Shown here: positions 40,793-64,000 of the stretch, piece after piece
Layout: each line of letters opens with the position of its first letter
Position numbering within the stretch: the first letter of the stretch is position 1
Assembly: GCF_022045235.1 (NCBI RefSeq)
Contig: NW_027266275.1
Coordinates: 38,254,001-38,318,000, forward strand
From: Haliotis cracherodii
Taxonomy: Eukaryota
Length of the DNA: 64,000 nt
Direction: 5' to 3'
Notes under the pieces: generated by a model
Seen by the model: only the letters and a program-made list of their open reading frames with translations
The model's database searches: none
What the model was told of the DNA's origin: nothing
Translations under genes and position numbers: made by a program

Positions 40793-41502
40793 TCTTAATT
40801 GTAATAAAGAAGTTGTTCATCCATAAATTCTTAGTACTCTAACTTCTAAGTGCCTATCAAAGAAGTTAATGATGTCACGCCTGAAGTAGCTTGAGATACA
40901 ATAACATTTTACTTGGTGTTGTAACTTGGCCGGGCTGTCAAAACTTATTGTTTCATCAATACGTCTGTGCATACATCTATACAATAGCATTATATCTATT
41001 TATATATCACTTTATAATGTTACAGTAAGTGCTCATCGATTTTCAGTTATCCATTGATATATTTTTTACCGCTATTGTTAACGTTTACACCAGATGGAAA
41101 TGGTTTCGTTGGAAAGTTGAAATTATTCTTTCTCTAGCATTGAATTTTTCATATGTGTATGGTTGGTCACAGGCATATTGCTTGATAACAACATCTGGTG
41201 TAACATAAAAACAAAGAATATTTGAATACAGAATATCTCGGTTTATTTCACATGGATATTTAACATTAACCGTGCCACGCATTTCAGCAAGAGGTAAGCT
41301 AATGTGTTTTAAATTATATTTTATTCAGGAAACAATAGTGAGAATAAGTCAGCCGAACAGACTAAATGTTAATATTTCCCTTTAAAATAACACGTGTTTT
41401 ATCACACACACACACTAACACACACACACTAACACACTTACACGAACACATGCTCATTCACTCACTCACTCGAACACATTCAGCAGTAAAAGGATAAGGA
41501 GT

Positions 41503-41772
41503 CTAAGAGAAGATCTTCCTAAAGAAGGCAGCAGCTCTCGTCAGCGCCTTTCTAAAGGGATGAATCTCTCTGTCATCCACAAAGCTGTGGTCGTCCTCGT
41601 CCTCGTACACCCAGTAGTCACTGTCATCGCCGTCACTTGGGGCAGGGTAGTGATCAGCGTGGTTAATGGTGACGGGGGCAGGGAGCGTCTCACCGTAGAC
41701 AGGGCGGGCCCAGAACGGAGTGAAGACGCTCAGGGGGTCGGGACAACGGGAAGGGGACACAGCCAGGGAACG
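41503..41772 (-). CDS. Array copy 1: putative terminal coding exon of an unknown small protein
   Basis: GC-rich open block of 89 codons after a pyrimidine tract and TAG; no ATG; acidic middle and cationic amphipathic C-terminus. Confidence 0.45.
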   Translation of the reverse strand, partial: RSLAVSPSRCPDPLSVFTPFWARPVYGETLPAPVTINHADHYPAPSDGDDSDYWVYEDEDDHSFVDDREIHPFRKALTRAAAFFRKIFS

Positions 41773-41990
41773 CTACACATCGAGGGGGTGGAAGGAGGGA
41801 CAAAGGGAGGCATGTGAGACAGAATACGGGATACGTTTGCAAAGAAAACGAATCACAGTTTATTATAGGGACTGGGCAGACTTAATGTACAATAAAACAG
41901 GGGCTATAATAGAAGGAAGAAGTGACAGGGAGGGCATGTAAAACTACATACACAGTCGGACTCCTCATCCTGAGACGGCCACAAACTCAC

Positions 41991-42031
41991 AGCCGCAGGA
42001 GTGCCATAATAGCGAATTATGTCCTCCCGAG
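41991..42031 (-). other. 41-nt internal exon of the array transcription unit (present in each copy)
   Basis: Minus strand: tttttctttttcag acceptor and gtgagt donor; the upstream 73-nt intron 42032-42104 starts gtaagt. Confidence 0.6.
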
Positions 42032-42354
42032 CTGAAAAAGAAAAACGAAAGCTAGGTTCAGTTAAATGTACGCCGGCGGCTGCGTTTACAAAATCACAAC
42101 TTACGTCTTCTGACAGCTACAATATGTCACTAGACCTCAGCCTTTTGACAATGCGAATTCCAAGTGTATGTTGGCTTTACAGGCTGTGCTGCAAGACCAC
42201 CATTAACCAATAAAATGGTCCAAACAGCTGCTTTTCACGTAATACAGGTTATCTTACATCTGTACTACATCGCTCGACACTATAATGAACGAACAGGTTA
42301 CATCTAAGCACCACGTCAAGTTTACAATCCAAATTTTTTAATTAAGACAATTGC

Positions 42355-42373
42355 AAATGGCGGCCGCCATCTT
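42355..42373. promoter_or_regulatory. Palindromic double YY1-like motif AAATGGCGGCCGCCATCTT (in each unit)
   Basis: Matches the AANATGGCG YY1 consensus on both strands; lies upstream of the minus-strand exons, near CCAAT motifs. Confidence 0.45.
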
Positions 42374-44172
42374 CAGTCCCGATACTGCTGCCTAACAACG
42401 ACCAATTTCACATCTAATTTAACATCTTAATACTGTTAAGTGGAATAATTGTGACCTTAAATACCTTGAATGTGAAGCCTTGTGTTCATCTTGGAAGAAG
42501 GCACACTTGGAAAGATACAGCAGTGAGCGAAACGTAGAGGTCAGCGGAGCAAATGCGATCGTTTTTCTGTTGTAAACAGAAGGGACGTGGGTAACGGCAA
42601 CGGTAACTACGTTACGGAGTTCGAGGACTCAGAACGAAGCTCATCGACAGCTTCCGGCGTGGTCAAGCCTAATGGCATTGCAGAGGCTGAAAACAGACGG
42701 GTTTATTTCGTCTGAACACCAGGCTTAAGTTGTAACTTACAACTGAAACGTTGCATACATCAGTTTAGAGTTTGAAAAAACGTGCTGGTGAAACTGGGTG
42801 TTTTTCGTGCCTCCATTACTCGGAACAGGGCGAATTTTGTTCATTTTCATATGGATCATCACTTGTAGACATTAACCTTAAACGTTGGCTGGGCCGAATA
42901 GCGATGCCATATAAGAACCCTCTGTTATACCAGTCTTCACAATACCTTTCACATTCGACAATCTGACACGGGCTAGTGGGCTAGTAAGAATGTGAGGGAG
43001 ACTAGATATTTTTTCAGCTACGGATGCAAAACCAGTTATAAACTATGAGCCTAAATAAAACTTTTCTTTAAAAAACACACACCTTGCAACAATTTATTTT
43101 TGGTGGCCGACATGTTCTTTTTGTTCAACAGTCTGAAGCATAATTATTTTCCAATCAATTTCTGAGACAATTTATTTGTTTCTGATAAAATCCTTCCCAC
43201 CCACACACTCACAGTCAGAGAAATCCAATTGTCCGTTCCATTTTGAAAACGCTGATGTGGACGTATAGGGGACGAATTCAGACCCCTTCTATCATTTATG
43301 TATTTTTGTAGAATGCCAGATACGAATATTACGTCATATTTGTATTAATCTACTCTTGCATACAAGTAGGTGTCAACATAGGCTTTTTACTTGCACCTGA
43401 CCACAGCCTATGTATAAAAGCATGCCCTCTGCTTTTTCTGAAGATCACGGGCCAAAGGAACAGCAGTGAAGTCGATTTCTGGAAGGCCACAATGAAGAGA
43501 CGAGTAGAATCCAATATTGTCTGGGTCGAAGGGAGATCACTCTCAATCCCTTGTCCGACTACCGGTATTAGATGGTGAAGTGCTCGTAATATATCCTATG
43601 TGGCGACACTTGTGTTTTAGAGAAGAAAGGCAATTCTCGATTCGAACTCCATCAATAGGAAGCCACAATCATTGTTTCATTAGAAAAGTTTAGCTAGTTA
43701 ATTGGAATATTAAAATTCTTCAATAACAAAGTGTCCAAGAGAGCTATCCTCGGAAAATATCCCGTGTCACAATTGTCGCCACATAAAAATTTAGAAGTAT
43801 CAAATCTTAAGGTAGCCCCACCTATTCAGAAATCTTCTGCCGAGTACAGATCATGAAATTGGGACACAGCAGAACAGCAATATAGGGGCAACTTTCACTG
43901 ATTAACAATATCCATATGAATTTATGTCTCATGTTCGGGAACCTTGGGATTTGGCCAGATGCCTATATTGCGATGCTGCTGTCGCCCAGATATTATTAGC
44001 TGTAAGGATGAAACACTGTAGACAAAACAGACAACTTGTGTATACATTACAGAAACATTTATTCAGATAACAGAAAGCCGAAAGTAATATGCCTCAAGAG
44101 AGATAAAAAAACGGGCCAAAATTGTATAGAACGTATAGTCTTGTGCGATTCTAATAAGCCAAGAGGTTTGCC

Positions 44173-44189
44173 GAAACGAAAGTGAAAGT
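44173..44189 (+). promoter_or_regulatory. IRF-binding-site-like GAAACGAAAGTGAAAGT (in each complete unit)
   Basis: Tandem GAAA repeats matching the IRF-E/ISRE consensus. Confidence 0.4.
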
Positions 44190-44400
44190 TGGGCCCAAAT
44201 GTATGTGCCTAAAAATACGCCAAAATGCACAAAGAGCGGTTATGTGGAAAGGTACTCTCTCTCTCTCTCTCCCTCTCTCTCTATCTCTCTCTCTCTCTTA
44301 TACAGACATGTATGTACTCGTTAATTCACTCTAACTCTCATCTCTAACATACATACCTTCTTCCTCTCACACACACATACATACATACTCATTCAGTCAG

Positions 44401-44440
<40 letters not shown>

Positions 44441-44790
44441 ACACACATTAGCACACTAACACACTAACACGAACACATGCTCATTCAATCTTTCATTTAC
44501 ACTCACATACGCACACATACATACACACATGCTCATTCACTCACTCACTCCAACACATTCAGACATTAAAAGGATAAGGAGTCTAAGAGAAGATCACACA
44601 CACATACATACATACTCATTCAGTCAGTCAATCACACAGACACACACACACACACACTAGCACACTTACACACTTACACGAACACATGCTCATTCAATCT
44701 TTCATTTACTCTCACATACGCACACATACATACACACATGCTCATTCACTCACTCACTCGAACACATTCAGCAGTAAAAGGATAAGGAGT

Positions 44791-45060
44791 CTAAGAGAAG
44801 ATCTTCCTAAAGAAGGCAGCAGCTCTCGTCAGCGCCTTTCTAAAGGGATGAATCTCTCTATCATCCACAAAGCTGTGGTCGTCCTCGTCCTCGTACACCC
44901 AGTAGTCACTGTCATCGTCGTCACTTGGGGCAGGGTAGTGATCAGCGTGGTTAATGGTGACGGGGGCAGGGAGCGTCTCACCGTAGACAGGGCGGGCCCA
45001 GAACGGAGTGAAGACGCTCAGGGGGTCGGGACAACGGGAAGGGGACACAGCCAGGGAACG
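44791..45060 (-). CDS. Array copy 2 of the putative small-protein exon
   Basis: Open frame; SDDDD variant; one synonymous change. Confidence 0.45.
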   Translation of the reverse strand, partial: RSLAVSPSRCPDPLSVFTPFWARPVYGETLPAPVTINHADHYPAPSDDDDSDYWVYEDEDDHSFVDDREIHPFRKALTRAAAFFRKIFS

Positions 45061-47550
45061 CTACACATCGAGGGGGTGGAAGGAGGGACAAAGGGAGGCA
45101 TGTGAGACAGAATACGGGATACGTTTGCAAAGAAAACGAATCACAGTTTATTATAGGGACTGGGCAGACTTAATGTACAATAAAACAGGGGCTATAATAG
45201 AAGGAAGAAGTGACAGGGAGGGCATGTAAAACTACATACACAGTCGGACTCCTCATCCTGAGACGGCCACAAACTCACAGCCGCAGGAGTGCCATAATAG
45301 CGAATTATGTCCTCCCGAGCTGAAAAAGAAAAACGAAAGCTAGGTTCAGTTAAATGTACGCCGGCGGCTGCGTTTACAAAATCACAACTTACGTCTTCTG
45401 ACAGCTACAATATGTCATTAGACCTCGGCCTTTTGACAATGCGAATTCCAAGTGTATGTGGGCTTTACAGGCTGTGCTGCAAGACCACCATTAACCAATA
45501 AAATGGGCCAAACAGCTGCTTTTCACGTAATACAGGTTATCTTACATCTGTACTACAACGCTCGACACTATAATGAACGAACAGGTTTCATCTAAGCACC
45601 ACATGTCAAGTTTACAATCCAAATTTTTCAATTAAGACAATTGCAAATGGCGGCCGCCATCTTCAGTCCCGATACTGCTGCCTAACAACGACCAATTTCA
45701 CATCTATATTAACATCTTAATACTGTTAAGTGGAATAATTGTGACCTTAAATACCTTGAATGTGAAGCCTTGTGTTCATCTTGGAAGAAGGCACACTTGG
45801 AAAGATACAGCAGTGAGCGAAACGTAGAGGTCAGCGGAGCAAATGCGATCGTTTTTCTGTTGTAAACAGAAGGGACGTGGGTAACGGCAACGGTAACTAT
45901 GTTACGGAGTTCGAGGACTCAGAACGAGGCTCATCGACAGCTTCCGGCGTGGTCAAGCCTAATGGCATTGCAGAGGCTGAAAACAGACGGGTTTATTTCG
46001 TCTGAACACCAGGCTTAAGTTGTAACTTACAACTGAAACGTTGCATACATCAGTTTAGAGTTTGAAAAAAACGTGCTGGTGAAACTGGGTGTTTTTCGTG
46101 CCTCCATTACTCGGAACAGGGCGAATTTTGTTCATTTTCATATGGATCATCACTTGTAGACATTAACCTGAAACGTTGGCCACGTGGCTGGGCCGAATAG
46201 CGATACCATATAAGAACCCTCTGTTATACCAGCCTTCACAATACCTTTTACATTCGACAAACTGACACGGGCTAGTGGGCTAGTAAGAATGTGAGGGAGA
46301 CTAGATATTTTTTCAGCTATGGATGCAAAACCAGTTATAAACTATGAGCCTAAATAAAACTTTTCTTTAAAAAACACACACCTTGCAACAATTTATTTTT
46401 GGTGGCCGACATGTTCTTTTTGTTCAACAGTCTGAAGCATAATTATTTTCCAATCAATTTCTGAGACAATTTATTTGTTTCTGATAAAATCCTTCCCACC
46501 CACACACTCACAGTCAGAGAAATCCAATTGTCCGTTCCATTTTGAAAACGCTGATGTGGACGTACAGGGGACGAATTCAGACCCCTTCTATCATTTATGT
46601 ATTTTTGTAGAATGCCAGATACGAATATTACGTCATATTTGTATTAATCTACTCTTGCATACAAGTAGGTGTCAACATAGGCGTTTTACTTGCACCTGAC
46701 CACAGCCTATGTATAAAAGCATGCCCTCTGCTTTTTCTGAAGATCACAGGCCAAAGGAACAGCAGTGAAGTCGATTTCTGGAAGGCCACAATGAAGAGAC
46801 GAGTGGAATCCAATATTGTCTGGGGCGAAGGGAGATCACTCTCAATCCCTTGTCCGACTACCGGTATTAGATGGTGAAGTGCTCGTAATATATCCTATGT
46901 GGCGACACTTGTGTTTTAGAGAAGAAAGGCAATTCTCGATTCGAACTCCATCAATAGGAAGCCACAATCATTGTTTCATTAGAAAAGTTTAGCTAGTTTA
47001 TTGGAATATTAAAATTCTTCAATAACAAAGTGTCCAAGAGAGCTATCCTCGGAAAATATCCCGTGTCACAATTGTCGCCACATAAAAATTTAGAAGTGTC
47101 AAATCTTAAGGTAGCCCCACCTATTCAGAAATCTTCTGCCGAGTACAGATCATGAAATTGGGACACAGCAGAACAGCAATATAGGGGCAACTTTCACTGA
47201 TTAACAATATCCATATGAATTTATGTCTCGTGTTCGGGAACCTTGGGATTTGGCCAGATGCCTATATTGCGATGCTGCTGTCGCCCAGATATTATTAGCT
47301 GTAAGGATGAAACACTGTAGACAAAACAGACAACTTGTGTATACATTACAGAAACATTTATTCAGATCACAGAAAGCCGAAAGTAATATGCCTCAAGAGA
47401 GATCCAAAAACGGGCCAAAATTGTATAGAACGTATAGTCTTGTGCGATTCTAATAAGCCAAGAGGTTTGCCGAAACGAAAGTGAAAGTTGGGCCAAAATG
47501 TATGTGCCTAAAAATACGCCAAAATGCACAAAGAGCAGTTATGTGGAAAG

Positions 47551-47614
<64 letters not shown>

Positions 47615-48127: not shown

Positions 48128-48397
48128 CTAAGAGAAGATCTTCCTAAAGAAGGCAGCAGCTCTCGTCAGCGCCTTTCTAAAGGGATGAATCTCTCTGTCA
48201 TCCACAAAGCTGTGGTCGTCCTCGTCCTCGTACACCCAGTAGTCACTGTCATCGTCGTCACTTGGGGCAGGGTAGTGATCAGCGTGGTTAATGGTGACGG
48301 GGGCAGGGAGCGTCTCACCGTAGACAGGGCGGGCCCAGAACGGAGTGAAGACGCTCAGGGGGTCGGGACAACGGGAAGGGGACACAGCCAGGGAACG
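48128..48397 (-). CDS. Array copy 3 of the putative small-protein exon
   Basis: Open frame; same protein as copies 2, 6 and 7. Confidence 0.45.
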   Translation of the reverse strand, partial: RSLAVSPSRCPDPLSVFTPFWARPVYGETLPAPVTINHADHYPAPSDDDDSDYWVYEDEDDHSFVDDREIHPFRKALTRAAAFFRKIFS

Positions 48398-51300
48398 CTA
48401 CACATCGAGGGGGTGGAAGGAGGGACAAAGGGAGGTATGTGAGACAGAATACGGGATACGTTTGCAAAGAAAACGAATCACAGTTTATTATAGGGACTGG
48501 GCAGACTTAATGTACAATAAAACAGGGGCTATAATAGAAGGAAGAAGTGACAGGGAGGGCATGTAAAACTACATACACAGTCGGACTCCTCATCCTGAGA
48601 CGGCCACAAACTCACAGCCGCAGGAGTGCCATAATAGCGAATTATGTCCTCCCGAGCTGAAAAAGAAAAACGAAAGCTAGGTTCAGTTAAATGTACGCCG
48701 GCGGCTGCGTTTACAAAATCACAACTTACGTCTTCTGACAGCTACAATATGTCACTAGACCTCGGCCTTTTGACAATGCGAATTTCAAGTGTATGTGGGC
48801 TTTACAGGCTGTGCTGCAATACCACCATTAACCAATAAAATGGGTCAAACAGCTGCTTTTCACGTAATACAGGTTATCTTACATCTGTACTACATCGCTC
48901 GACACTATAATGAACGAACAGGTTTCATCTAAGCACCACATGTCAAGTTTACAATCCAAATTTTTCAATTAAGACAATTGCAAATGGCGGCCGCCATCTT
49001 CAGTCCCGATACTGCTGCCTAACAACGACCAATTTCACATCTATATTAACATCTTAATACTGTTAAGTGGAATAATTGTGACCTTAAATACCTTGAATGT
49101 GAAGCCTTGTGTTCATCTTGGAAGAAGGCACACTTGGAAAGATACAGCAGTGAGCGAAACGTAGAGGTCAGCGGAGCAAATGCGATCGTTTTTCTGTTGT
49201 AAACAGAAGGGACGTGGGTAACGGCAACGGTAACTACGTTACGGAGTTCGAGGACTCAGAACGAGGCTCATCGACAGCTTCCGGCGTGGTCAAGCCTAAT
49301 GGCATTGCAGAGGCTGAAAACAGACGGGTTTATTTCGTCTGAACACCAGGCTTAAGTTGTAACTTACAACTGAAACGTTGCATACATCAGTTTAGAGTTT
49401 GAAAAAACGTGCTGGTGAAACTGGGTGTTTTTCGTGCCTCCATTACTCGGAACAGGGCGAATTTTGTTCATTTTCATATGGATCATCACTTGTAGACATT
49501 AACCTGAAACGTTGGCCACGTGGCTGGGCCGAATAGCGATACCATATAAGAACCCTCTGTTATACCAGCCTTCACAATACCTTTTACATTCGACAAACTG
49601 ACACGGGCTAGTGGGCTAGTAAGAATGTGAGGGAGACTAGATATTTTTTCAGCTACGGATGCAAAACCAGTTATAAACTATGAGCCTAAATAAAACTTTT
49701 CTTTAAAAAACACACACCTTGCAACAATTTATTTTTGGTGGCCGACATGTTCTTTTTGTTCAACAGTCTGAAGCATAATTATTTTCCAATCAATTTCTGA
49801 GACAATTTATTTGTTTCTGATAAAATCCTTCCCACCCACACACTCACAGTCAGAGAAATCCAATTGTCCGTTCCATTTTGAAAACGCTGATGTGGACGTA
49901 CAGGGGACGAATTCAGACCCCTTCTATCATTTATGTATTTTTGTAGAATGCCAGATACGAATATTACGTCATATTTGTATTAATCTACTCTTGCATACAA
50001 GTAGGTGTCAACATAGGCTTTTTACTTGCACCTGACCACAGCCTATGTATAAAAGCATGCCCTCTGCTTTTTCTGAAGATCACAGGCCAAAGGAACAGCA
50101 GTGAAGTCGATTTCTGGAAGGCCACAATGAAGAGACGAGTGGCATCCAATATTGTCTGGGGCGAAGGGAGATCACTCTCAATCCCTTGTCCGACTACCGG
50201 TATTAGATGGTGAAGTGCTCGTAATATATCCTATGTGGCGACACTTGTGTTTTAGAGAAGAAAGGCAATTCTCGATTCGAACTCCATCAATAGGAAGCCA
50301 CAATCATTGTTTCATTAGAAAAGTTTAGCTAGTTAATTGGAATATTAAAATTCTTCAATAACAAAGTGTCCAAGAGAGCTATCCTCGGAAAATATCCCGT
50401 GTCACAATTGTCGCCACATAAAAATTTAGAAGTATCAAATCTTAAGGTAGCCCCACCTATTCAGAAATCTTCTGCCGAGTACAGATCATGAAATTGGGAC
50501 ACAGCAGAACAGCAATGTAGGGGCAACTTTCACTGATTAACAATATCCATAGGAATTTATGTCTCATGTTCGGGAACCTTGGGATTTGGCCAGATGCCTA
50601 TATTGCGATGCTGCTGTCGCCCAGATATTATTAGCTGTAAGGATGAAACACTGTAGACAAAACAGACAACTTGTGTATACATTACAGAAACATTTATTCA
50701 GATAACAGAAAGCCGAAAGTAATATGTCTCAAGAGAGATCCAAAAACGGGCCAAAATTGTATAGAACGTATAGTCTTGTGCGATTCTAATAAGCCAAGAG
50801 GTTTGCCGAAACGAAAGTGAAAGTTGGGCCAAAATGTATGTGCCTAAAAATACGCCAAAATGCACAAAGAGCGGTTATGTGGAAAGGTACTCTCTCTCTC
50901 TCTCACTCTCTCTCTCTCTCTGTGTCTTATACAGACATATATGTACTCGTTAATTCACTCTAACTCTCATCTCTAACATACATACCTTCTTCCTCTCACA
51001 CACACATACATACATACTCATTCAGTCAGTCACACACACAGACACACACACAGACACACACACACATTAGCACACTTACACACTAACACGAACACATGCT
51101 CATTCAATCTTTCATTTACACTCACATACGCACACATACATACACACATGCTCATTCACTCACTCACTCCAACACATTCAGACATTAAAAGGATAAGGAG
51201 TCTAAGAGAAGATCACACACACATACATACATACTCATTCAGTCAGTCAATCACACAGACACACAGACACATTAGCACACTTACACACTAACACGAACAC

Positions 51301-51642: not shown

Positions 51643-51912
51643 CTAAGAGAAGATCTTCCTAAAGAAGGCAGCAGCTCTCGTCAGCGCCTTTCTAAAGGGA
51701 TGAATCTCTCTGTCATCCACAAAGCTGTGGTCGTCCTCGTCCTCGTACACCCAGTAGTCACTGTCATCGTCGTCACTTGGGGCAGGGTAGTGATCAGCGT
51801 GGTTAATGGTGACGGGGGCAGGGAGCGTCTCACCGTAGACAGGGCGGGCCCAGAACGGAGTGAAGACGCTCAGGGGCGCGGGACAACGGGAAGGGGACAC
51901 AGCCAGGGAACG
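51643..51912 (-). CDS. Array copy 4 of the putative small-protein exon
   Basis: Open frame; CPAPL variant. Confidence 0.45.
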   Translation of the reverse strand, partial: RSLAVSPSRCPAPLSVFTPFWARPVYGETLPAPVTINHADHYPAPSDDDDSDYWVYEDEDDHSFVDDREIHPFRKALTRAAAFFRKIFS

Positions 51913-54900
51913 CTACACATCGAGGGGGTGGAAGGAGGGACAAAGGGAGGCATGTGAGACAGAATACGGGATACGTTTGCAAAGAAAACGAATCACAGTT
52001 TATTATAGGGACTGGGCAGACTTAATGTACAATAAAACAGGGGCTATAATAGAAGGAAGAAGTGACAGGGAGGGCATGTAAAACTACATACACAGTCGGA
52101 CTCCTCATCCTGAGACGGCCACAAACTCACAGCCGCAGGAGTGCCATAATAGCGAATTATGTCCTCCCGAGCTGAAAAAGAAAAACGAAAGCTAGGTTCA
52201 GTTAAATGTACGCCGGCGGCTGCGTTTACAAAATCACAACTTACGTCTTCTGACAGCTACAATATGTCATTAGACCTCGGCCTTTTGACAATGCGAATTC
52301 CAAGTGTATGTGGGCTTTACAGGCTGTGCTGCAAGACCACCATTAACCAATAAAATGGGCCAAACAGCTGCTTTTCACGTAATACAGGTTATCTTACATC
52401 TGTACTACAACGCTCGACACTATAATGAACGAACAGGTTTCATCTAAGCACCACATGTCAAGTTTACAATCCAAATTTTTCAATTAAGACAATTGCAAAT
52501 GGCGGCCGCCATCTTCAGTCCCGATACTGCTGCCTAACAACGACCAATTTCACATCTATATTAACATCTTAATACTGTTAAGTGGAATAATTGTGACCTT
52601 AAATACCTTGAATGTGAAGCCTTGTGTTCATCTTGGAAGAAGGCACACTTGGAAAGATACAGCAGTGAGCGAAACGTAGAGGTCAGCGGAGCAAATGCGA
52701 TCGTTTTTCTGTTGTAAACAGAAGGGACGTGGGTAACGGCAACGGTAACTACGTTACGGAGTTCGAGGACTCAGAACGAGGCTCATCGACAGCTTCCGGC
52801 GTGGTCAAGCCTAATGGCATTGCAGAGGCTGAAAACAGACGGGTTTATTTCGTCTGAACACCAGGCTTAAGTTGTAACTTACAACTGAAACGTTGCATAC
52901 ATCAGTTTAGAGTTTGAAAAAACGTGCTGGTGAAACTGGGTGTTTTTCGTGCCTCCATTATTCGGAACAGGGCAAATTTTGTTCATTTTCATATGGATCA
53001 TCACTTGTAGACATTAACCTGAAACGTTGGCCACGTGGCTGGGCCGAATAGCGATACCATATAAGAACCCTCTGTTATACCAGCCTTCACAATACCTTTT
53101 ACATTCGACAAACTGACACGGGCTAGTGGGCTAGTAAGAATGTGAGGGAGACTAGATATTTTTTCAGCTATGGATGCAAAACCAGTTATAAACTATGAGC
53201 CTAAATAAAACTTTTCTTTAAAAAACACACACCTTGCAACAATTTATTTTTGGTGGCCGACATGTTCTTTTTGTTCAACAGTCTGAAGCATAATTATTTT
53301 CCAATCAATTTCTGAGACAATTTATTTGTTTCTGATAAAATCCTTCCCACCCACACACTCACAGTCAGAGAAATCCAATTGTCCGTTCCATTTTGAAAAC
53401 GCTGATGTGGACGTACAGGGGACGAATTCAGACCCCTTCTATCATTTATGTATTTTTGTAGAATGCCAGATACGAATAGTACGTCATATTTGTATTAATC
53501 TACTCTTGCATACAAGTAGGTGTCAACATAGGCGTTTTACTTGCACCTGACCACAGCCTATGTATAAAAGCATGCCCTCTGCTTTTTCTGAAGATCACGG
53601 GCCAAAGGAACAGCAGTGAAGTCGATTTCTGGAAGGCCACAATGAAGAGACGAGTGGAATCCAATATTGTCTGGGTCGAAGGGAGATCACTCTCAATCCC
53701 TTGTCCGACTACCGGTATTAGATGGTGAAGTGCTCGTAATATATCCTATGTGGCGACACTTGTGTTTTAGAGAAGAAAGGCAATTCTCGATTCGAACTCC
53801 ATCAATAGGAAGCCACAATCATTGTTTCATTAGAAAAGTTTAGCTAGTTAATTGGAATATTAAAATTCTTCAATAACAAAGTGTCCAAGAGAGCTATCCT
53901 CGGAAAATATCCCGTGTCACAATTGTCGCCACATAAAAATTTAGAAGTGTCAAATCTTAAGGTAGCCCCACCTATTCAGAAATCTTCTGCCGAGTACAGA
54001 TCATGAAATTGGGACACAGCAGAACAGCAATATAGGGGCAACTTTCACTGATTAACAATATCCATATGAATTTATGTCTCGTGTTCGGGAACCTTGGGAT
54101 TTGGCCAGATGCCTATATTGCGATGCTGCTGTCGCCCAGATATTATTAGCTGTAAGGATGAAACACTGTAGACAAAACAGACAACTTGTGTATACATTAC
54201 AGAAACATTTATTCAGATAACAGAAAGCCGAAAGTAATATGTCTCAAGAGAGATCCAAAAACGGGCCAAAATTGTATAGAACGTATAGTCTTGTGCGATT
54301 CTAATAAGCCAAGAGGTTTGCCGAAACGAAAGTGAAAGTTGGGCCAAAATGTATGTGCCTAAAAATACGCCAAAATGCACAAAGAGCGGTTATGTGGAAA
54401 GGTACTCTCTCTCTCTCTCACTCTCTCTCTCTCTGTGTCTTATACAGACATATATGTACTCGTTAATTCACTCTAACTCTCATCTCTAACATACATACCT
54501 TCTTCCTCTCACACACACATACATACATACTCATTCAGTCAGTCACACACACAGACACACACACAGACACACACACACATTAGCACACTTACACACTAAC
54601 ACGAACACATGCTCATTCAATCTTTCATTTACACTCACATACGCACACATACATACACACATGCTCATTCACTCACTCACTCCAACACATTCAGACATTA
54701 AAAGGATAAGGAGTCTAAGAGAAGATCACACACACATTCATACATACTCATTCAGTCAGTCAATCACACAGACACACAGACACATTAGCACACTTACACA
54801 CTAACACGAACACATGCTCATTCAATCTTTCATTTACACTCACATACGCACACATACATTCACACATGCTCATTCACTCACTCACTCGAACACATTCAGA

Positions 54901-55157: not shown

Positions 55158-55427
55158 CTAAGAGAAGATCTTCCTAAAGAAGGCAGCAGCTCTCGTCAGC
55201 GCCTTTCTAAAGGGATGAATCTCTCTGTCATCCACAAAGCTGTGGTCGTCCTCGTCCTCGTACACCCAGTAGTCACTGTCATCGTCGTCACTTGGGGCAG
55301 GGTAGTGATCAGCGTGGTTAATGGTGACGGGGGCAGGGAGCGTCTCACCGTAGACAGGGCGGGCCCAGAACGGAGTGAAGACGCTCAGGGGCGCGGGACA
55401 ACGGGAAGGGGACACAGCCAGGGAACG
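55158..55427 (-). CDS. Array copy 5 of the putative small-protein exon
   Basis: Open frame; CPAPL variant. Confidence 0.45.
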   Translation of the reverse strand, partial: RSLAVSPSRCPAPLSVFTPFWARPVYGETLPAPVTINHADHYPAPSDDDDSDYWVYEDEDDHSFVDDREIHPFRKALTRAAAFFRKIFS

Positions 55428-57916
55428 CTACACATCGAGGGGGTGGAAGGAGGGACAAAGGGAGGCATGTGAGACAGAATACGGGATACGTTTGCAAAGA
55501 AAACGAATCACAGTTTATTATAGGGACTGGGCAGACTTAATGTACAATAAAACAGGGGCTATAATAGAAGGAAGAAGTGACAGGGAGGGCATGTAAAACT
55601 ACATACACAGTCGGACTCCTCATCCTGAGACGGCCACAAACTCACAGCCGCAGGAGTGCCATAATAGCGAATTATGTCCTCCCGAGCTGAAAAAGAAAAA
55701 CGAAAGCTAGGTTCAGTTAAATGTACGCCGGCGGCTGCGTTTACAAAATCACAACTTACGTCTTCTGACAGCTACAATATGTCATTAGACCTCGGCCTTT
55801 TGACAATGCGAATTCCAAGTGTATGTGGGCTTTACAGGCTGTGCTGCAAGACCACCATTAACCAATAAAATGGGCCAAACAGCTGCTTTTCACGTAATAC
55901 AGGTTATCTTACATCTGTACTACAACGCTCGACACTATAATGAACGAACAGGTTTCATCTAAGCACCACATGTCAAGTTTACAATCCAAATTTTTCAATT
56001 AAGACAATTGCAAATGGCGGCCGCCATCTTCAGTCCCGATACTGCTGCCTAACAACGACCAATTTCACATCTATATTAACATCTTAATACTGTTAAGTGG
56101 AATAATTGTGACCTTAAATACCTTGAATGTGAAGCCTTGTGTTCATCTTGGAAGAAGGCACACTTGGAAAGATACAGCAGTGAGCGAAACGTAGAGGTCA
56201 GCGGAGCAAATGCGATCGTTTTTCTGTTGTAAACAGAAGGGACGTGGGTAACGGCAACGGTAACTACGTTACGGAGTTCGAGGACTCAGAACGAGGCTCA
56301 TCGACAGCTTCCGGCGTGGTCAAGCCTAATGGCATTGCAGAGGCTGAAAACAGACGGGTTTATTTCGTCTGAACACCAGGCTTAAGTTGTAACTTACAAC
56401 TGAAACGTTGCATACATCAGTTTAGAGTTTGAAAAAACGTGCTGGTGAAACTGGGTGTTTTTCGTGCCTCCATTATTCGGAACAGGGCGAATTTTGTTCA
56501 TTTTCATATGGATCATCACTTGTAGACATTAACCTGAAACGTTGGCCACGTGGCTGGGCCGAATAGCGATACCATATAAGAACCCTCTGTTATACCAGCC
56601 TTCACAATACCTTTTACATTCGACAAACTGACACGGGCTAGTGGGCTAGTAAGAATGTGAGGGAGACTAGATATTTTTTCAGCTATGGATGCAAAACCAG
56701 TTATAAACTATGAGCCTAAATAAAACTTTTCTTTAAAAAACACACACCTTGCAACAATTTATTTTTGGTGGCCGACATGTTCTTTTTGTTCAACAGTCTG
56801 AAGCATAATTATTTTCCAATCAATTTCTGAGACAATTTATTTGTTTCTGATAAAATCCTTCCCACCCACACACTCACAGTCAGAGAAATCCAATTGTCCG
56901 TTCCATTTTGAAAACGCTGATGTGGACGTACAGGGGACGAATTCAGACCCCTTCTATCATTTATGTATTTTTGTAGAATGCCAGATACGAATAGTACGTC
57001 ATATTTGTATTAATCTACTCTTGCATACAAGTAGGTGTCAACATAGGCGTTTTACTTGCACCTGACCACAGCCTATGTATAAAAGCATGCCCTCTGCTTT
57101 TTCTGAAGATCACGGGCCAAAGGAACAGCAGTGAAGTCGATTTCTGGAAGGCCACAATGAAGAGACGAGTGGAATCCAATATTGTCTGGGTCGAAGGGAG
57201 ATCACTCTCAATCCCTTGTCCGACTACCGGTATTAGATGGTGAAGTGCTCGTAATATATCCTATGTGGCGACACTTGTGTTTTAGAGAAGAAAGGCAATT
57301 CTCGATTCGAACTCCATCAATAGGAAGCCACAATCATTGTTTCATTAGAAAAGTTTAGCTAGTTAATTGGAATATTAAAATTCTTCAATAACAAAGTGTC
57401 CAAGAGAGCTATCCTCGGAAAATATCCCGTGTCACAATTGTCGCCACATAAAAATTTAGAAGTGTCAAATCTTAAGGTAGCCCCACCTATTCAGAAATCT
57501 TCTGCCGAGTACAGATCATGAAATTGGGACACAGCAGAACAGCAATATAGGGGCAACTTTCACTGATTAACAATATCCATATGAATTTATGTCTCGTGTT
57601 CGGGAACCTTGGGATTTGGCCAGATGCCTATATTGCGATGCTGCTGTCGCCCAGATATTATTAGCTGTAAGGATGAAACACTGTAGACAAAACAGACAAC
57701 TTGTGTATACATTACAGAAACATTTATTCAGATCACAGAAAGCCGAAAGTAATATGCCTCAAGAGAGATCCAAAAACGGGCCAAAATTGTATAGAACGTA
57801 TAGTCTTGTGCGATTCTAATAAGCCAAGAGGTTTGCCGAAACGAAAGTGAAAGTTGGGCCAAAATGTATGTGCCTAAAAATACGCCAAAATGCACAAAGA
57901 GCAGTTATGTGGAAAG

Positions 57917-57960
<44 letters not shown>

Positions 57961-58471
57961 ACAGACATATATGTACTCGTTAATTCACTCTAACTCTCAT
58001 CTCTAACATACATACCTTCTTCCTCTCACACACACATACATACATACTCATTCAGTCAGTCACACACACAGACACACAGACACACACACACATTAGCACA
58101 CTTACACACTAATACACTAACACGAACACATGCTCATTCAATCTTTCATTTACACTCACATACGCACACATACATACACACATGCTCATTCTCTCACTCA
58201 CTCGAACACATTCAGACATTAAAAGGATAAGGAGTCTAAGAGAAGATCACACACACATTCATACATACTCATTCAGTCAGTCCATCACACAGACACACAT
58301 ACACACAAACACACACACACACACTAACACACACACACTAGCACACTTACACACTTACACGAACACATGCTCATTCAATCTTTCATTTACTCTCACATAC
58401 GCACACATACATACACACATGCTCATTCACTCACTCACTCGAACACATTCAGCAGTAAAAGGATAAGGAGT

Positions 58472-58741
58472 CTAAGAGAAGATCTTCCTAAAGAAGGCAG
58501 CAGCTCTCGTCAGCGCCTTTCTAAAGGGATGAATCTCTCTGTCATCCACAAAGCTGTGGTCGTCCTCGTCCTCGTACACCCAGTAGTCACTGTCATCGTC
58601 GTCACTTGGGGCAGGGTAGTGATCAGCGTGGTTAATGGTGACGGGGGCAGGGAGCGTCTCACCGTAGACAGGGCGGGCCCAGAACGGAGTGAAGACGCTC
58701 AGGGGGTCGGGACAACGGGAAGGGGACACAGCCAGGGAACG
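58472..58741 (-). CDS. Array copy 6 of the putative small-protein exon
   Basis: Open frame. Confidence 0.45.
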   Translation of the reverse strand, partial: RSLAVSPSRCPDPLSVFTPFWARPVYGETLPAPVTINHADHYPAPSDDDDSDYWVYEDEDDHSFVDDREIHPFRKALTRAAAFFRKIFS

Positions 58742-61700
58742 CTACACATCGAGGGGGTGGAAGGAGGGACAAAGGGAGGTATGTGAGACAGAATACGGGA
58801 TACGTTTGCAAAGAAAACGAATCACAGTTTATTATAGGGACTGGGCAGACTTAATGTACAATAAATCAGGGGCTATAATAGAAGGAAGAAGTGACAGGGA
58901 GGGCATGTAAAACTACATACACAGTCGGACTCCTCATCCTGAGACGGCCACAAACTCACAGCCGCAGGAGTGCCATAATAGCGAATTATGTCCTCCCGAG
59001 CTGAAAAAGAAAAACGAAAGCTAGGTTCAGTTAAATGTACGCCGGCGGCTGCGTTTACAAAATCACAACTTACGTCTTCTGACAGCTACAATATGTCACT
59101 AGACCTCGGCCTTTTGACAATGCGAATTTCAAGTGTATGTGGGCTTTACAGGCTGTGCTGCAAGACCACCATAAACCAATAAAATGGGTCAAACAGATGC
59201 TTTTCACGTAATACAGGTTATCTTACATCTGTACTACATCGCTCGACACTATAATGAACGAACAGGTTTCATCTAAGCACCACATGTCATGTTTACAATC
59301 CAAATTTTTCAATTAAGACAATTGCAAATGGCGGCCGCCATCTTCAGTCCCGATACTGCTGCCTAACAACGACCAATTTCACATCTATATTAACATCTTA
59401 ATACTGTTAAGTGGAATAATTGTGACCTTAAATACCTTGAATGTGAAGCCTTGTGTTCATCTTGGAAGAAGGCACACTTGGAAAGATACAGCAGTGAGCG
59501 AAACGTAGAGGTCAGCGGAGCAAATGCGATCGTTTTTCTGTTGTAAACAGAAGGGACGTGGGTAACGGCAACGGTAACTACGTTACGGAGTTCGAGGACT
59601 CAGAACGAGGCTCATCGACAGCTTCCGGCGTGGTCAAGCCTAATGGCATTGCAGAGGCTGAAAACAGACGGGTTTATTTCGTCTGAACACCAGGCTTAAG
59701 TTGTAACTTACAACTGAAACGTTGCATACATCAGTTTAGAGTTTGAAAAAACGTGCTGGTGAAACTGGGTGTTTTTCGTGCCTCCATTACTCGGAACAGG
59801 GCGAATTTTGTTCATTTTCATATGGATCATCACTTGTAGACATTAACCTGAAACGTTGGCCACGTGGCTGGGCCGAATAGCGATACCATATAAGAACCCT
59901 CTGTTATACCAGCCTTCACAATACCTTTTACATTCGACAAACTGACACGGGCTAGTGGGCTAGTAAGAATGTGAGGGAGACTAGATATTTTTTCAGCTAC
60001 GGATGCAAAACCAGTTATAAACTATGAGCCTAAATAAAACTTTTCTTTAAAAAACACACACCTTGCAACAATTTATTTTTGGTGGCCGACATGTTCTTTT
60101 TGTTCAACAGTCTGAAGCATAATTATTTTCCAATCAATTTCTGAGACAATTTATTTGTTTCTGATAAAATCCTTCCCACCCACACACTCACAGTCAGAGA
60201 AATCCAATTGTCCGTTCCATTTTGAAAACGCTGATGTGGACGTACAGGGGACGAATTCAGACCCCTTCTATCATTTATGTATTTTTGTAGAATGCCAGAT
60301 ACGAATATTACGTCATATTTGTATTAATCTACTCTTGCATACAAGTAGGTGTCAACATAGGCGTTTTACTTGCACCTGACCATAGCCTATGTATAAAAGC
60401 ATGCCCTCTGCTTTTTCTGAAGATCACAGGCCAAAGGAACAGCAGTGAAGTCGATTTCTGGAAGGCCACAATGATTAGACGAGTGGCATCCAATATTGTC
60501 TGGGGCGAAGGGAGATCACTCTCAATCCCTTGTCCGACTACCGGTATTAGATGGTGAAGTGCTCGTAATATATTCTATGTGGCGACACTTGTGTTTTAGA
60601 GAAGAAAGGCAATTCTCGATTCGAACTCCATCAATAGGAAGCCACAATCATTGTTTCATTAGAAAAGTTTAGCTAGTTAATTGGAATATTAAAATTCTTC
60701 AATAACAAAGTGTCCAAGAGAGCTATCCTCGGAAAATATCCCGTGTCACAATTGTCGCCACATAAAAATTTAGAAGTGTCAAATCTTAAGGTAGCCCCAC
60801 CTATTCAGAAATCTTCTGCCGAGTACAGATCATGAAATTGGGACACAGCAGAACAGCAATGTAGGGGCAACTTTCACTGATTAACAATATCCATAGGAAT
60901 TTATGTCTCATGTTCGGGAACCTTGGGATTTGGCCAGATGCCTATATTGCGATGCTGCTGTCGCCCAGATATTATTAGCTGTAAGGATGAAACACTGTAG
61001 ACAAAACAGACAACTTGTGTATACATTACAGAAACATTTATTCAGATAACAGAAAGCCGAAAGTAATATGTCTCAAGAGAGATCCAAAAACGGGCCAAAA
61101 TTGTATAGAACGTATAGTCTTGTGCGATTCTAATAAGCCAAGAGGTTTGCCGAAACGAAAGTGAAAGTTGGGCCAAAATGTATGTGCCTAAAAATACGCC
61201 AAAATGCACAAAGAGCGGTTATGTGGAAAGGTACTCTCTCTCTCTCTCACTCTCTCTCTCTCTGTGTCTTATACAGACATATATGTACTCGTTAATTCAC
61301 TCTAACTCTCATCTCTAACATACATACCTTCTTCCTCTCACACACACATACATACATACTCATTCAGTCAGTCACACACACAGACACACACACAGACACA
61401 CACACACATTAGCACACTTACACACTAACACGAACACATGCTCATTCAATCTTTCATTTACACTCACATACGCACACATACATACACACATGCTCATTCA
61501 CTCACTCACTCCAACACATTCAGACATTAAAAGGATAAGGAGTCTAAGAGAAGATCACACACACATACATACATACTCATTCAGTCAGTCAATCACACAG
61601 ACACACAGACACATTAGCACACTTACACACTAACACGAACACATGCTCATTCAATCTTTCATTTACACTCACATACGCACACATACATTCACACATGCTC

Positions 61701-61810
61701 ATTCACTCACTCACTCGAACACATTCAGACATTAAAAGGATAAGGAGTCTAAGAGAAGATCACACACACATACATACATACTCATTCAGTCAGTCAATCA
61801 CACAGACACA

Positions 61811-61847
<37 letters not shown>

Positions 61848-62000
61848 ACACACTAACACACACACACTAGCACACTTACACATTTACACGAACACATGCT
61901 CATTCAATCTTTCATTTACTCTCACATACGCACACATACATACACACATGCTCATTCACTCACTCACTCGAACACATTCAGCAGTAAAAGGATAAGGAGT

Positions 62001-62270
62001 CTAAGAGAAGATCTTCCTAAAGAAGGCAGCAGCTCTCGTCAGCGCCTTTCTAAAGGGATGAATCTCTCTGTCATCCACAAAGCTGTGGTCGTCCTCGTCC
62101 TCGTACACCCAGTAGTCACTGTCATCGTCGTCACTTGGGGCAGGGTAGTGATCAGCGTGGTTAATGGTGACGGGGGCAGGGAGCGTCTCACCGTAGACAG
62201 GGCGGGCCCAGAACGGAGTGAAGACGCTCAGGGGGTCGGGACAACGGGAAGGGGACACAGCCAGGGAACG
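62001..62270 (-). CDS. Array copy 7 of the putative small-protein exon
   Basis: Open frame. Confidence 0.45.
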   Translation of the reverse strand, partial: RSLAVSPSRCPDPLSVFTPFWARPVYGETLPAPVTINHADHYPAPSDDDDSDYWVYEDEDDHSFVDDREIHPFRKALTRAAAFFRKIFS

Positions 62271-64000
62271 CTACACATCGAGGGGGTGGAAGGAGGGACA
62301 AAGGGAGGCATGTGAGACAGAATACGGGATACGTTTGCAAAGAAAACGAATCACAGTTTATTATAGGGACTGGGCAGACTTAATGTACAATAAAACAGGG
62401 GCTATAATAGAAGGAAGAAGTGACAGGGAGGGCATGTAAAACTACATACACAGTCGGACTCCTCATCCTGAGACGGCCACAAACTCACAGCCGCAGGAGT
62501 GCCATAATAGCGAATTATGTCCTCCCGAGCTGAAAAAGAAAAACGAAAGCTAGGTTCAGTTAAATGTACGCCGGCGGCTGCGTTTACAAAATCACAACTT
62601 ACGTCTTCTGACAGCTACAATATGTCATTAGACCTCGGCCTTTTGACAATGCGAATTCCAAGTGTATGTGGGCTTTACAGGCTGTGCTGCAAGACCACCA
62701 TTAACCAATAAAATGGGCCAAACAGCTGCTTTTCACGTAATACAGGTTATCTTACATCTGTACTACAACGCTCGACACTATAATGAACGAACAGGTTTCA
62801 TCTAAGCACCACATGTCAAGTTTACAATCCAAATTTTTCAATTAAGACAATTGCAAATGGCGGCCGCCATCTTCAGTCCCGATACTGCTGCCTAACAACG
62901 ACCAATTTCACATCTATATTAACATCTTAATACTGTTAAGTGGAATAATTGTGACCTTAAATACCTTGAATGTGAAGCCTTGTGTTCATCTTGGAAGAAG
63001 GCACACTTGGAAAGATACAGCAGTGAGCGAAACGTAGAGGTCAGCGGAGCAAATGCGATCGTTTTTCTGTTGTAAACAGAAGGGACGTGGGTAACGGCAA
63101 CGGTAACTACGTTACGGAGTTCGAGGACTCAGAACGAGGCTCATCGACAGCTTCCGGCGTGGTCAAGCCTAATGGCATTGCAGAGGCTGAAAACAGACGG
63201 GTTTATTTCGTCTGAACACCAGGCTTAAGTTGTAACTTACAACTGAAACGTTGCATACATCAGTTTAGAGTTTGAAAAAACGTGCTGGTGAAACTGGGTG
63301 TTTTTCGTGCCTCCATTATTCGGAACAGGGCGAATTTTGTTCATTTTCATATGGATCATCACTTGTAGACATTAACCTGAAACGTTGGCCACGTGGCTGG
63401 GCCGAATAGCGATACCATATAAGAACCCTCTGTTATACCAGCCTTCACAATACCTTTTACATTCGACAAACTGACACGGGCTAGTGGGCTAGTAAGAATG
63501 TGAGGGAGACTAGATATTTTTTCAGCTATGGATGCAAAACCAGTTATAAACTATGAGCCTAAATAAAACTTTTCTTTAAAAAACACACACCTTGCAACAA
63601 TTTATTTTTGGTGGCCGACATGTTCTTTTTGTTCAACAGTCTGAAGCATAATTATTTTCCAATCAATTTCTGAGACAATTTATTTGTTTCTGATAAAATC
63701 CTTCCCACCCACACACTCACAGTCAGAGAAATCCAATTGTCCGTTCCATTTTGAAAACGCTGATGTGGACGTACAGGGGACGAATTCAGACCCCTTCTAT
63801 CATTTATGTATTTTTGTAGAATGCCAGATACGAATAGTACGTCATATTTGTATTAATCTACTCTTGCATACAAGTAGGTGTCAACATAGGCGTTTTACTT
63901 GCACCTGACCACAGCCTATGTATAAAAGCATGCCCTCTGCTTTTTCTGAAGATCACGGGCCAAAGGAACAGCAGTGAAGTCGATTTCTGGAAGGCCACAA

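What the first reader, a model, noticed from the sequence alone, without database searches (positions are those of the whole stretch)
41401..64000. Recently amplified 3.4-kb tandem array in which every unit carries an unrecognised spliced small gene
Seen: at least 7 near-identical head-to-tail units with no transposase, RT, rRNA or histone content that I can recognise. Each unit has, on the minus strand, a YY1-like palindrome, a gtaagt donor, a 73-nt intron, a 41-nt exon, a gtgagt donor, two pyrimidine-rich TAG acceptors and an 89-codon open block, intact in all 7 copies. Inference: this is a gene-bearing macrosatellite (organised like human D4Z4/DUX4) amplifying an orphan gene, plausibly copy-number variable. 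The copies are too similar for the intact frames to prove selection.
Basis: partly seen in the sequence, partly recalled or inferred. Interest (0 to 1): 0.8.

Follow-up and report, generated by a model that had tools for sequence, protein, structure and literature searches.

The report
Abalone orphan gene in tandem arrays
The 3.3-3.5-kb repeat is a real tandem array in which every unit is one complete small gene, found only in abalones, present about 200 times in this genome and kept intact by selection; its 124-residue acidic, mostly unfolded protein has no known function.

Summary
The array is real. Units of 3.3-3.5 kb, 95-99% identical, run from 41433 to the window end and on to C12:38345139, giving 14 gene copies of which 7 lie in the window.

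RefSeq models, RNA-like contigs and paralogue footprints give:
- an ATG mini-exon (59460-59436);
- a 435-nt intron holding the YY1-like palindrome;
- a 179-nt intron;
- the 89-codon exon 3.

The product is a 124-aa acidic, disordered protein with a C-terminal amphipathic basic helix. RefSeq already lists it as "uncharacterized protein" in H. cracherodii, H. rufescens and H. asinina.

The genome holds about 200 copies in many arrays on 7 chromosomes. All 150 copies scored have an open exon 3, and dN/dS is 0.09-0.22. No relatives turned up outside Haliotis, and no Pfam, PDB or Atlas match.

Splicing of intron 1 is shown by RNA-like contigs. Splicing of intron 2 is only inferred. Function and tissue of expression are unknown.

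The scan has already met this family on other DNA of this genome (s1-829593). I class it as a new member of a known kind: a gene-bearing macrosatellite, or tandem multigene family.

The parts
41433..64000 (-). In-window part (6.8 units, 7 gene copies) of a 49.7-kb tandem array that continues to C12:38345139 (14 gene copies in all).
   Evidence: Self-BLAST; whole-array BLAST after fetching the continuation.
59436..59657 (-). Exon 1 of the reference copy. It holds a 197-nt 5'UTR with the conserved motifs GCCGGAAG, GTAACGTAGTTACCGTTG and CTGTTTACAACAG, then the ATG at 59460 and 25 coding nt, ending at the donor G|gtattt. In the other copies the ATG lies at 62989, 56146, 52631, 49116, 45779 and 42489.
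   Evidence: RNA-like contigs cover 59436-59657 and splice at both ends. The block is conserved across both clades. Coordinates. RefSeq proteins start MNTRLHIQ.
59001..59435 (-). Intron 1 (435 nt). Its first 120 nt are conserved and end in the YY1-type site.
   Evidence: The joint 59000/59436 (CT..AC on +, which is GT..AG on -) appears in X1, X2 and X15 but not in the DNA-like run X16. Conservation profile.
59326..59344 (.). YY1-like palindrome AAGATGGCGGCCGCCATTT. Only the half GGCCGCCATTTGCAA is conserved in the older clade. Other copies lie at 62855-62873, 56012-56030, 52497-52515, 48982-49000, 45645-45663 and 42355-42373.
58921..59000 (-). Exon 2 (80 nt, phase 1). It completes the Ala codon and then encodes REDIIRYYGTPAAVSLWPSQDEESDC. 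In the other copies its first base is at 62529, 55686, 52171, 48656, 45319 and 42031.
   Evidence: 100% and 95% identical to the C78 and C1 arrays and 83-85% to clade II, while its flanks do not align. Acceptor ttttcag| and donor |gtatgt are conserved in all 34 copies sampled.
58742..58920 (-). Intron 2 (179 nt), gtatgt...gtgtag. It is retained in the RNA-like contigs that could be laid. It carries an in-frame stop, so it must be removed for exon 3 to be translated.
   Evidence: RefSeq models.
58472..58741 (-). Exon 3 coding part: 89 codons plus TAG, with no Met codon inside. Other copies lie at 62001-62270, 55158-55427, 51643-51912, 48128-48397, 44791-45060 and 41503-41772.
   Evidence: Open in all 7 window copies and in 150 of 150 genome copies scored. 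dN/dS is 0.09-0.22. Variable columns by codon position are 25/24/53.
57912..58471 (-). 3'UTR with a CA/TG-rich 205-bp sub-repeat of 1.8-2.2 copies. The sub-repeat re-duplicates the last ~12 coding nt and the stop codon, and accounts for the 3.3-kb versus 3.5-kb unit lengths. An AATAAA follows at about 57730.
   Evidence: TRF rows; sequence read; an RNA contig runs at least 241 nt past 58456.
60374..60502 (-). Upstream non-coding exon ('exon 0'), spliced to 59657 in RNA-like contigs of other organisms. It is poorly conserved between arrays (65-85%), so its use here is uncertain.
   Evidence: The contig piece was laid at 57060-57188, which is the same unit position one period away; conservation.

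Best explanation
The stretch is half of a 14-copy tandem array of a Haliotis-restricted protein-coding gene. Each 3.3-3.5-kb unit is one whole gene on the minus strand. In order it holds:
- a conserved 5' module (an ETS-like CCGGAAG, two short palindromes, and an ATG mini-exon);
- a 435-nt intron with a conserved YY1-type site;
- an 80-nt exon;
- a 179-nt intron;
- an 89-codon last exon;
- a CA-rich 3'UTR.

Shown:
- The product is 124 aa, acidic (pI about 4.7) and predicted disordered, with a -12 Asp/Glu-aromatic tract followed by a +5 amphipathic C-terminal helix. It has no signal peptide.
- The family has about 200 copies in many arrays on 7 chromosomes. It falls into two old clades with dS about 0.7 between them.
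- The coding exons are under purifying selection, while introns and spacers diverge freely.

Inferred:
- Arrays are homogenised by unequal crossing-over or gene conversion. Neighbouring units share variants, and within-array identity is well above between-array identity.
- The high copy number is kept because a large dose of the product is needed in some cell type or stage.
- The protein acts inside the cell as a disordered binder. Its conserved short motifs, such as DPLSVFTPFWARP and SDYWVYEDEDD, and its amphipathic helix would dock on a partner or a membrane.
- Which tissue or stage, and which partner, is unknown.
For: Array structure.

Gene model:
- RefSeq 124-aa proteins of H. cracherodii on this same chromosome (P0016, P0003) match the three window exons read separately.
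- The GT..AG joint 59436/59000 is in three RNA-like runs and absent from a DNA-like run.
- Only exon 1, exon 2 and exon 3 align with clade II units.
- Splice sites are conserved in all 34 sampled copies.
- An in-frame 3-nt indel lies in exon 2.

Selection:
- 150 of 150 copies are open at 74-100% aa identity.
- dN/dS is 0.09-0.22. For the six more diverged pairs (dS 0.2 or more) no bootstrap replicate reached 1. For the closest pair (dS 0.11) 1.2% did.
- Variable columns are in excess at the third codon position.

Copy number: 202 pattern hits against 0 in the control. The 5'UTR motif gives 200 hits against 16 in the control.

Protein: AF2 gives only helix 107-123, with mean pLDDT 57.

Restriction to Haliotis.

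Age and orthology of array subtypes.
Against: - The only transcripts I could lay are contigs from other, coded organisms at about 98% identity. They retain intron 2 and carry a 1-nt deletion in exon 3. A fully spliced, in-frame mRNA from this array is therefore not shown, only inferred.
- Three RNA-like runs that the tool added under a species label hold next to none of the words.
- No tissue, stage or protein-level evidence is available.
- The dosage and binder parts of the explanation rest on analogy.
Confidence: 0.82

Rival explanations
1. The gene is a selfish ampliconic gene. The arrays grew through genetic conflict, such as meiotic drive or gamete competition, as with Stellate/Su(Ste), Sly/Slx or the human cancer-testis arrays, and not because the animal needs the dose. 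The protein is still real.
For: - Hundreds of copies sit in many arrays, in both orientations, on several chromosomes.
- The gene is lineage-restricted.
- The product is small, acidic and disordered, like GAGE/PAGE-type products (own knowledge).
- Several RNA-like runs hold no trace of it.
Against: - There is no sex-chromosome or germline link.
- Selection is purifying, not positive, in every pair tested.
- No antagonist family was identified.
Confidence: 0.15
2. The repeat is a non-coding macrosatellite or lncRNA array, and the 89-codon block is a relic or chance frame that is never translated.
For: - The RNA-like contigs retain intron 2, which places a stop before exon 3, and carry a frameshift.
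- Exon 3 has no ATG of its own.
Against: - 150 of 150 frames are open at down to 74% identity.
- dN/dS is about 0.15, and third codon positions vary most.
- Indels are multiples of 3 in exons only.
- The frame always opens exactly at a conserved acceptor.
Confidence: 0.04
3. The gene encodes a secreted defence-peptide precursor: an anionic pro-region followed by a cationic amphipathic C-terminal peptide, released by cleavage.
For: A -12 acidic tract is followed by a +5 amphipathic helix with muH 0.62, which only 2.4% of shuffles reach. Defence genes are often multicopy (own knowledge).
Against: - Neither RefSeq N-terminus (MNTRLHIQAREDII.., MNCDFLNVAVGV..) looks like a signal peptide, by eye.
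- There is no dibasic site before the helix.
- The whole length is conserved, not only the C-terminus.
Confidence: 0.05
4. The unit is a non-autonomous transposable element or plain satellite, unrelated to gene function.
For: The unit is high-copy and dispersed to several chromosomes, and it contains a CA-rich internal repeat.
Against: - No ORF in the unit exceeds 139 aa.
- Copies occur almost only head-to-tail in arrays.
- Between clades only the three exons are conserved, not the ends of the unit.
Confidence: 0.02

Closest known systems
RefSeq 'uncharacterized protein' family of Haliotis (e.g. XP_071106966/XP_071106956 H. cracherodii, XP_048243304 H. rufescens, XP_067685017 H. asinina)
   Same: This is the same gene family. 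P0016 and P0003 come from this very chromosome and match the window's three exons. Lengths are 120-124 aa and the exon junctions are the same.
   Different: Nothing differs.
Human gene-bearing macrosatellites: D4Z4/DUX4 (3.3 kb), CT47, GAGE, USP17, REXO1L1
   Same: Head-to-tail units of a few kb each hold a complete gene, with tens to hundreds of copies, sometimes in more than one array (PMC4063668). GAGE and CT47 products are small, and GAGE proteins are acidic and disordered (own knowledge).
   Different: There is no sequence relation. DUX4 is an intronless double-homeobox ORF, whereas this gene has at least two coding introns and no domain. The human arrays are few per family, whereas here there are more than 25 arrays on 7 chromosomes. 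Germline restriction and copy-number variation are untested here.
Classical tandem multigene families under concerted evolution (histone, 5S rRNA and snRNA arrays)
   Same: One gene sits in each short unit. Units are homogenised within arrays and differ between arrays, and the product is under purifying selection.
   Different: The product is a lineage-restricted protein of unknown role, not a universal housekeeping molecule. There is no Rfam or Pfam match.
Abalone sperm protein FITZAP (sp6)
   Same: It is abalone-specific, small, intrinsically disordered and strongly anionic, with a poly-Asp run (PMC6952181).
   Different: FITZAP has a signal peptide, two exons and an N-terminal poly-Asp. This protein has three coding exons, no signal peptide, and an internal acidic tract followed by a basic helix. 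I did not compare the sequences, because no FITZAP sequence was available from a tool.

Membership tests
Gene-bearing macrosatellite / tandem multigene array | Head-to-tail repeat units of at least 1 kb with high identity | tested here: met
   Periods are 3299-3529 bp at 95-99% identity, with 14 units over 49.7 kb.
Gene-bearing macrosatellite / tandem multigene array | Every unit carries a complete, intact gene | tested here: met
   All 14 units have the exon 1 ATG, exon 2 and an open exon 3. One unit has a 3.17-kb transposon in intron 1.
Gene-bearing macrosatellite / tandem multigene array | The unit gene is transcribed | tested here: inconclusive
   Spliced contigs at about 98% identity appear in 3 RNA-like runs of other coded organisms. 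They retain intron 2 and carry a frameshift. No run of this species shows the gene.
Gene-bearing macrosatellite / tandem multigene array | Copy number varies between individuals | not tested
   This needs long-read or read-depth data from several animals.
DUX4/D4Z4-type homeobox array | The unit ORF encodes homeodomain(s) | tested here: not met
   Pfam gives no hit above E=1 for exon 3 or for the full RefSeq proteins.
Haliotis uncharacterized-protein family (RefSeq) | Full-length sequence identity and the same exon junctions | tested here: met
   Identity is 97-100% to H. cracherodii and H. rufescens members and 76-81% to H. asinina. The exons were compared one by one.
Protein-coding gene under selection | dN/dS well below 1 between diverged copies; frame kept | tested here: met
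   Omega is 0.09-0.22. Bootstrap upper bounds are 0.5 or less for the six more diverged pairs and 0.81 for the closest pair. 150 of 150 frames are open.
Secreted cationic peptide precursor | N-terminal signal peptide | tested here: not met
   Both RefSeq N-termini are charged and polar when read by eye. No predictor tool was run.
FITZAP/sp6 | Signal peptide, two exons, N-terminal poly-Asp | tested here: not met
   The architecture was compared with the paper's description. No sequence comparison was possible.
Transposable element | Transposase or RT ORF, or solitary copies with terminal repeats | tested here: not met
   No ORF in the unit exceeds 139 aa. Copies are nearly all in arrays. Only the exons are conserved between clades. 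Terminal repeats were not searched for explicitly.

The most novel reading that the evidence does not exclude
The family could be an abalone-specific, massively amplified gene. Its ~200 short, small-intron units, each with an ETS/YY1-type promoter module, would exist to deliver a burst of one disordered protein during a brief window: gametogenesis or the first zygotic transcription. That would make it an invertebrate counterpart of the mammalian germline and cleavage-stage gene arrays. In that case copy number should vary between individuals and species and could matter for fertility or hybrid compatibility.
Probability: 0.2. Interest if true: 0.7.

Novelty: new member of a known kind. Interest (0 to 1): 0.45.

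Why it matters
About 0.7 Mb of the black abalone genome (roughly 200 units of 3.3-5 kb) is spent on one small gene found nowhere outside abalones, and selection keeps every copy readable. That makes it one of the clearest invertebrate examples of a protein-coding macrosatellite family. It offers a tractable case for asking how lineage-restricted genes reach very high dosage and spread to new chromosomal sites. It is also a candidate marker of copy-number variation in an endangered species. The corrected exon model is what anyone would need to measure its expression or raise an antibody. Without a tissue, stage or partner, the biological meaning stays open.

Tried and rejected
Searches that found nothing:
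- Rfam and tRNA scans of the whole window.
- Pfam on exon 3 and on three RefSeq proteins; the best hit was E=1.1.
- ESM Atlas; the best score, 0.78, is chance level.
- PDB profile search; best E=0.27.
- AlphaFold2 with a 21-sequence alignment. Mean pLDDT was 57 and only the C-terminal helix appeared, so I ran no fold search.
- Six RefSeq LOC identifiers in the paper library, with 0 papers. A general search on abalone tandem or orphan genes found nothing specific.
- A 21-nt piece of the loose 5' end of the RNA contig. It is absent from the window, so the furthest upstream exon of that transcript is not in this array.

Profile search of 1.84 billion representatives. Apart from Haliotis it returned three repeat-inflated hits from metagenomes (P0030-P0032). 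I reject these as summed chance matches of a 10-residue motif.

Ideas rejected:
- FITZAP/sp6, on architecture.
- The RefSeq 140-aa isoform for this array. Its ATG exists in C78 copies only.

I neither built nor searched a joined coding sequence or an exon-exon junction. Full-length analyses used RefSeq proteins that a tool had returned.
Full report
**1. The observation**

A self-comparison shows head-to-tail units with offsets of 3299, 3336, 3515, 3515, 3314 and 3529 bp. They start at 41433 and run past the window end at 95-99% identity. The window is G000:C12:38254001-38318000.

After fetching the continuation, the array ends at C12:38345139. It is 49.7 kb long and holds 14 gene copies, 7 of them in the window. 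Length differences between units come from a CA-rich 205-bp sub-repeat of 1.8-2.2 copies in the 3'UTR.

The seven gene regions are 98.3-100% identical over 874 nt and differ at only 21 columns. The palindrome AAGATGGCGGCCGCCATTT and the 89-codon block (58475-58741 in the reference copy, plus TAG) are present and intact in all seven. No Rfam family or tRNA is present.

**2. The gene model**

The word search with the 89-codon block found RefSeq 'uncharacterized proteins' of 120-145 aa in Haliotis cracherodii, H. rufescens and H. asinina. P0016 and P0003 come from an 82,358,895-bp record, the length of C12.

Read exon by exon, the window encodes:
- MNTRLHIQ plus one base (59460-59436);
- two bases plus REDIIRYYGTPAAVSLWPSQDEESDC (59000-58921);
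- the 89 codons (58741-58475).

That makes 124 aa. I did not build or search a joined sequence. Full-length analyses used the RefSeq proteins that tools returned.

- Its acceptor ttttcag|CTCGGG is real, but the donor that pairs with it lies 435 nt upstream, not 73 nt.
- Its 'gtgagt' sits inside exon 2.
- Its 'gtaagt' lies in the unconserved part of intron 1. At that spot some C78 paralogues have the ATG of an alternative 140-aa isoform, which the window copies cannot encode.

**3. RNA**

Fifteen small RNA-like Logan assemblies (three coded organisms, five studies) hold 39-45% of the sampled words of window:58300-59600. Four large assemblies look like DNA. Three runs that the tool added under a species label hold next to none of the words.

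I laid four runs on window:57000-60500.
- The DNA-like run covers nearly the whole unit and shows the tandem junction 60313>57000.
- The three RNA-like runs cover only exon-like blocks.
- They carry one contig, for example 1165 nt in X15, reading on the minus strand: 57188-57060 (the same unit position as 60502-60374), then 59657-59436, then 59000-58456, then 241 nt more.
- The joint 59436/59000 skips 435 nt with GT..AG. It is in all three RNA-like runs and absent from the DNA-like run.

Splicing of intron 1, and of an upstream intron, is therefore shown.

The limits are these.
- The contigs are about 98% identical, so they come from another species or another copy.
- They retain intron 2.
- They carry a 1-nt deletion at 58605 in exon 3 and a 1-nt insertion behind 58863.
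- Their furthest 5' letters are not in the window.

A fully spliced, in-frame mRNA from this array is thus inferred, not shown.

**4. Paralogues and selection**

A six-frame search of the genome with the 89 codons scored 150 of 242 candidates. All 150 have an open frame of 88-89 codons at 74-100% identity. They lie in arrays of 3-5-kb period on C12, C78, C1, C56, C34 and C45.

A 27-nt degenerate pattern from the invariant FTPFWARP stretch hits 202 places against 0 for the control, adding C2. A 20-nt 5'UTR motif hits 200 places against 16 for the control, at the matching positions. About 200 copies therefore carry both ends of the gene.

I fetched 20 representative units. Against the C78 and C1 arrays the identities are:

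| Region | vs C78 | vs C1 | Gaps |
|---|---|---|---|
| Exon 2 | 100% | 95% | none |
| Exon 3 CDS | 96% | 92-94% | none |
| Exon 1 | 94-96% | 83-92% | none vs C78, 17 vs C1 |
| First 120 nt of intron 1 | 94-96% | 85-86% | 0-1 |

The other introns, exon 0, the 3'UTR and the spacer are 48-92% identical, mostly with gaps.

Against the older clade (C56, C34, C45) only three blocks align at all: exon 1 with the start of intron 1, exon 2, and exon 3.

In all 34 sampled copies the acceptor ttttcag|, the donor TGT|gtatgt and the acceptor Y-tract+TAG| are kept, and the frame opens exactly at that TAG.

Pairwise dN/dS of exon 3 is 0.09-0.22, with dS up to 0.8. For the six more diverged pairs no bootstrap replicate reached 1. 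For the closest pair (window vs C78, dS 0.11) 1.2% did. Variable columns by codon position are 25, 24 and 53. This is a translated gene under purifying selection. Because exon 3 has no Met, intron 2 must be spliced in the functional mRNA.

**5. History**

A tree of the exon-3 peptide splits with 100/100 support into two clades.
- Clade I holds black and red abalone, on C12, C78 and C1.
- Clade II holds black abalone on C56, C34 and C45 together with all H. asinina proteins.

Within clade I, red-abalone proteins group with particular black-abalone arrays (short alignment, midpoint root only). The family and several array subtypes are therefore older than these species. High identity within an array fits concerted evolution. 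Neighbouring units share variants: PAPL in units 4, 5 and 9, and KIFA in units 12-14. A second array of 7 copies, 13.5 Mb away in the opposite orientation, is 94-98% identical, and its flanks share only short repeat-like pieces with this array's flanks.

**6. Regulatory module**

The block conserved in both clades starts at GCCGGAAG (ETS-like). It continues through GTAACGTAGTTACCGTTG, CTGTTT(N)AACAG, the ATG and the donor. It ends about 110 nt into intron 1 at GGCCGCCATTTGCAA, a YY1-type site. The full palindrome exists in clade I only. That this module is the core promoter and its downstream element is my inference. No start-site data exist.

**7. The protein**

- It has 124 aa, pI 4.7 and 12 Pro, and 16 residues are aromatic.
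- Net charge by segment is -3 (1-35), 0 (36-80), -12 (81-105) and +5 (106-124).
- AlphaFold2 with 21 family sequences gives mean pLDDT 57 and one element, helix 107-123.
- That helix is amphipathic, with muH 0.62, a value reached by 2.4% of shuffles.
- Conservation runs along the whole length.
- No signal peptide is apparent by eye.

No Pfam, PDB or Atlas relative turned up. A profile search of 1.84 billion representatives returned only Haliotis proteins plus three repeat-inflated metagenome hits that I reject.

**8. Comparison with known systems**

By layout this is a gene-bearing macrosatellite, like human D4Z4/DUX4, CT47, GAGE or USP17 (PMC4063668). By dynamics it resembles classical tandem multigene families. 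It is not a DUX4 relative, because it has no homeobox and has introns. It is not FITZAP by architecture (PMC6952181). It is the RefSeq-annotated but unstudied Haliotis family.

The scan met the same kind of array on another piece of this genome (s1-829593). My independent tests agree with that note's verdict.

**9. Verdict**

Transcription is shown only through contigs from close relatives. Function is unknown.

My best guess is a dosage-amplified intracellular disordered binder. A germline or early-embryo role, or a conflict-driven expansion, is possible but untested.

Noticed in passing
C12:38327039-38330204 (about 9-12 kb beyond the window end; loci L031/L037): A 3.17-kb insertion with CCC...GGG inverted ends at a TTAA site looks like a piggyBac-type non-autonomous element. 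It sits in intron 1 of the 10th unit, 10 nt downstream of the YY1-like palindrome. That unit's exons are still intact.
   Followed up: partly
C34 array (RefSeq XP_071118469, P0029): A 655-aa RefSeq model chains nine successive exon-3 copies through a GAG|GTTCAT donor inside exon 3. That donor exists only in clade II copies. This is either read-through transcription with unit-to-unit splicing or an annotation artefact.
   Followed up: partly
C9:25810468-25810734(-), C45:53810470(-), C23:29002058(-): Solitary matches to the exon-1/YY1 module lie outside any array. They could be dispersed copies or a progenitor locus.
   Followed up: no
window 59976-60136 (and the same unit position in every copy): A short repeat in the upstream intron is matched by many unrelated RNA and DNA contigs, with 81-105-nt internal skips. 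It looks like a MITE-like dispersed element.
   Followed up: no
window 59590-59560 (exon 1 5'UTR): An upstream ATG (CGATGA) is conserved in both clades. Its short frame ends inside the conserved GTAACGTAG palindrome, so it may be a regulatory uORF.
   Followed up: no
window 33635-34165 (+): This 176-aa ORF looks, by eye, like the C-terminal DDE part of a Tc1/mariner transposase. It was not scanned against Pfam.
   Followed up: no
window 38330-39178; 25243-25939; 6828-7625: Three ordinary satellites have periods of 86 bp (9.9 copies), 51 bp (14 copies) and 37/107 bp. The 86-bp one lies 2.2 kb from the array edge. The edge itself falls in the CA-rich 3'UTR repeat.
   Followed up: no
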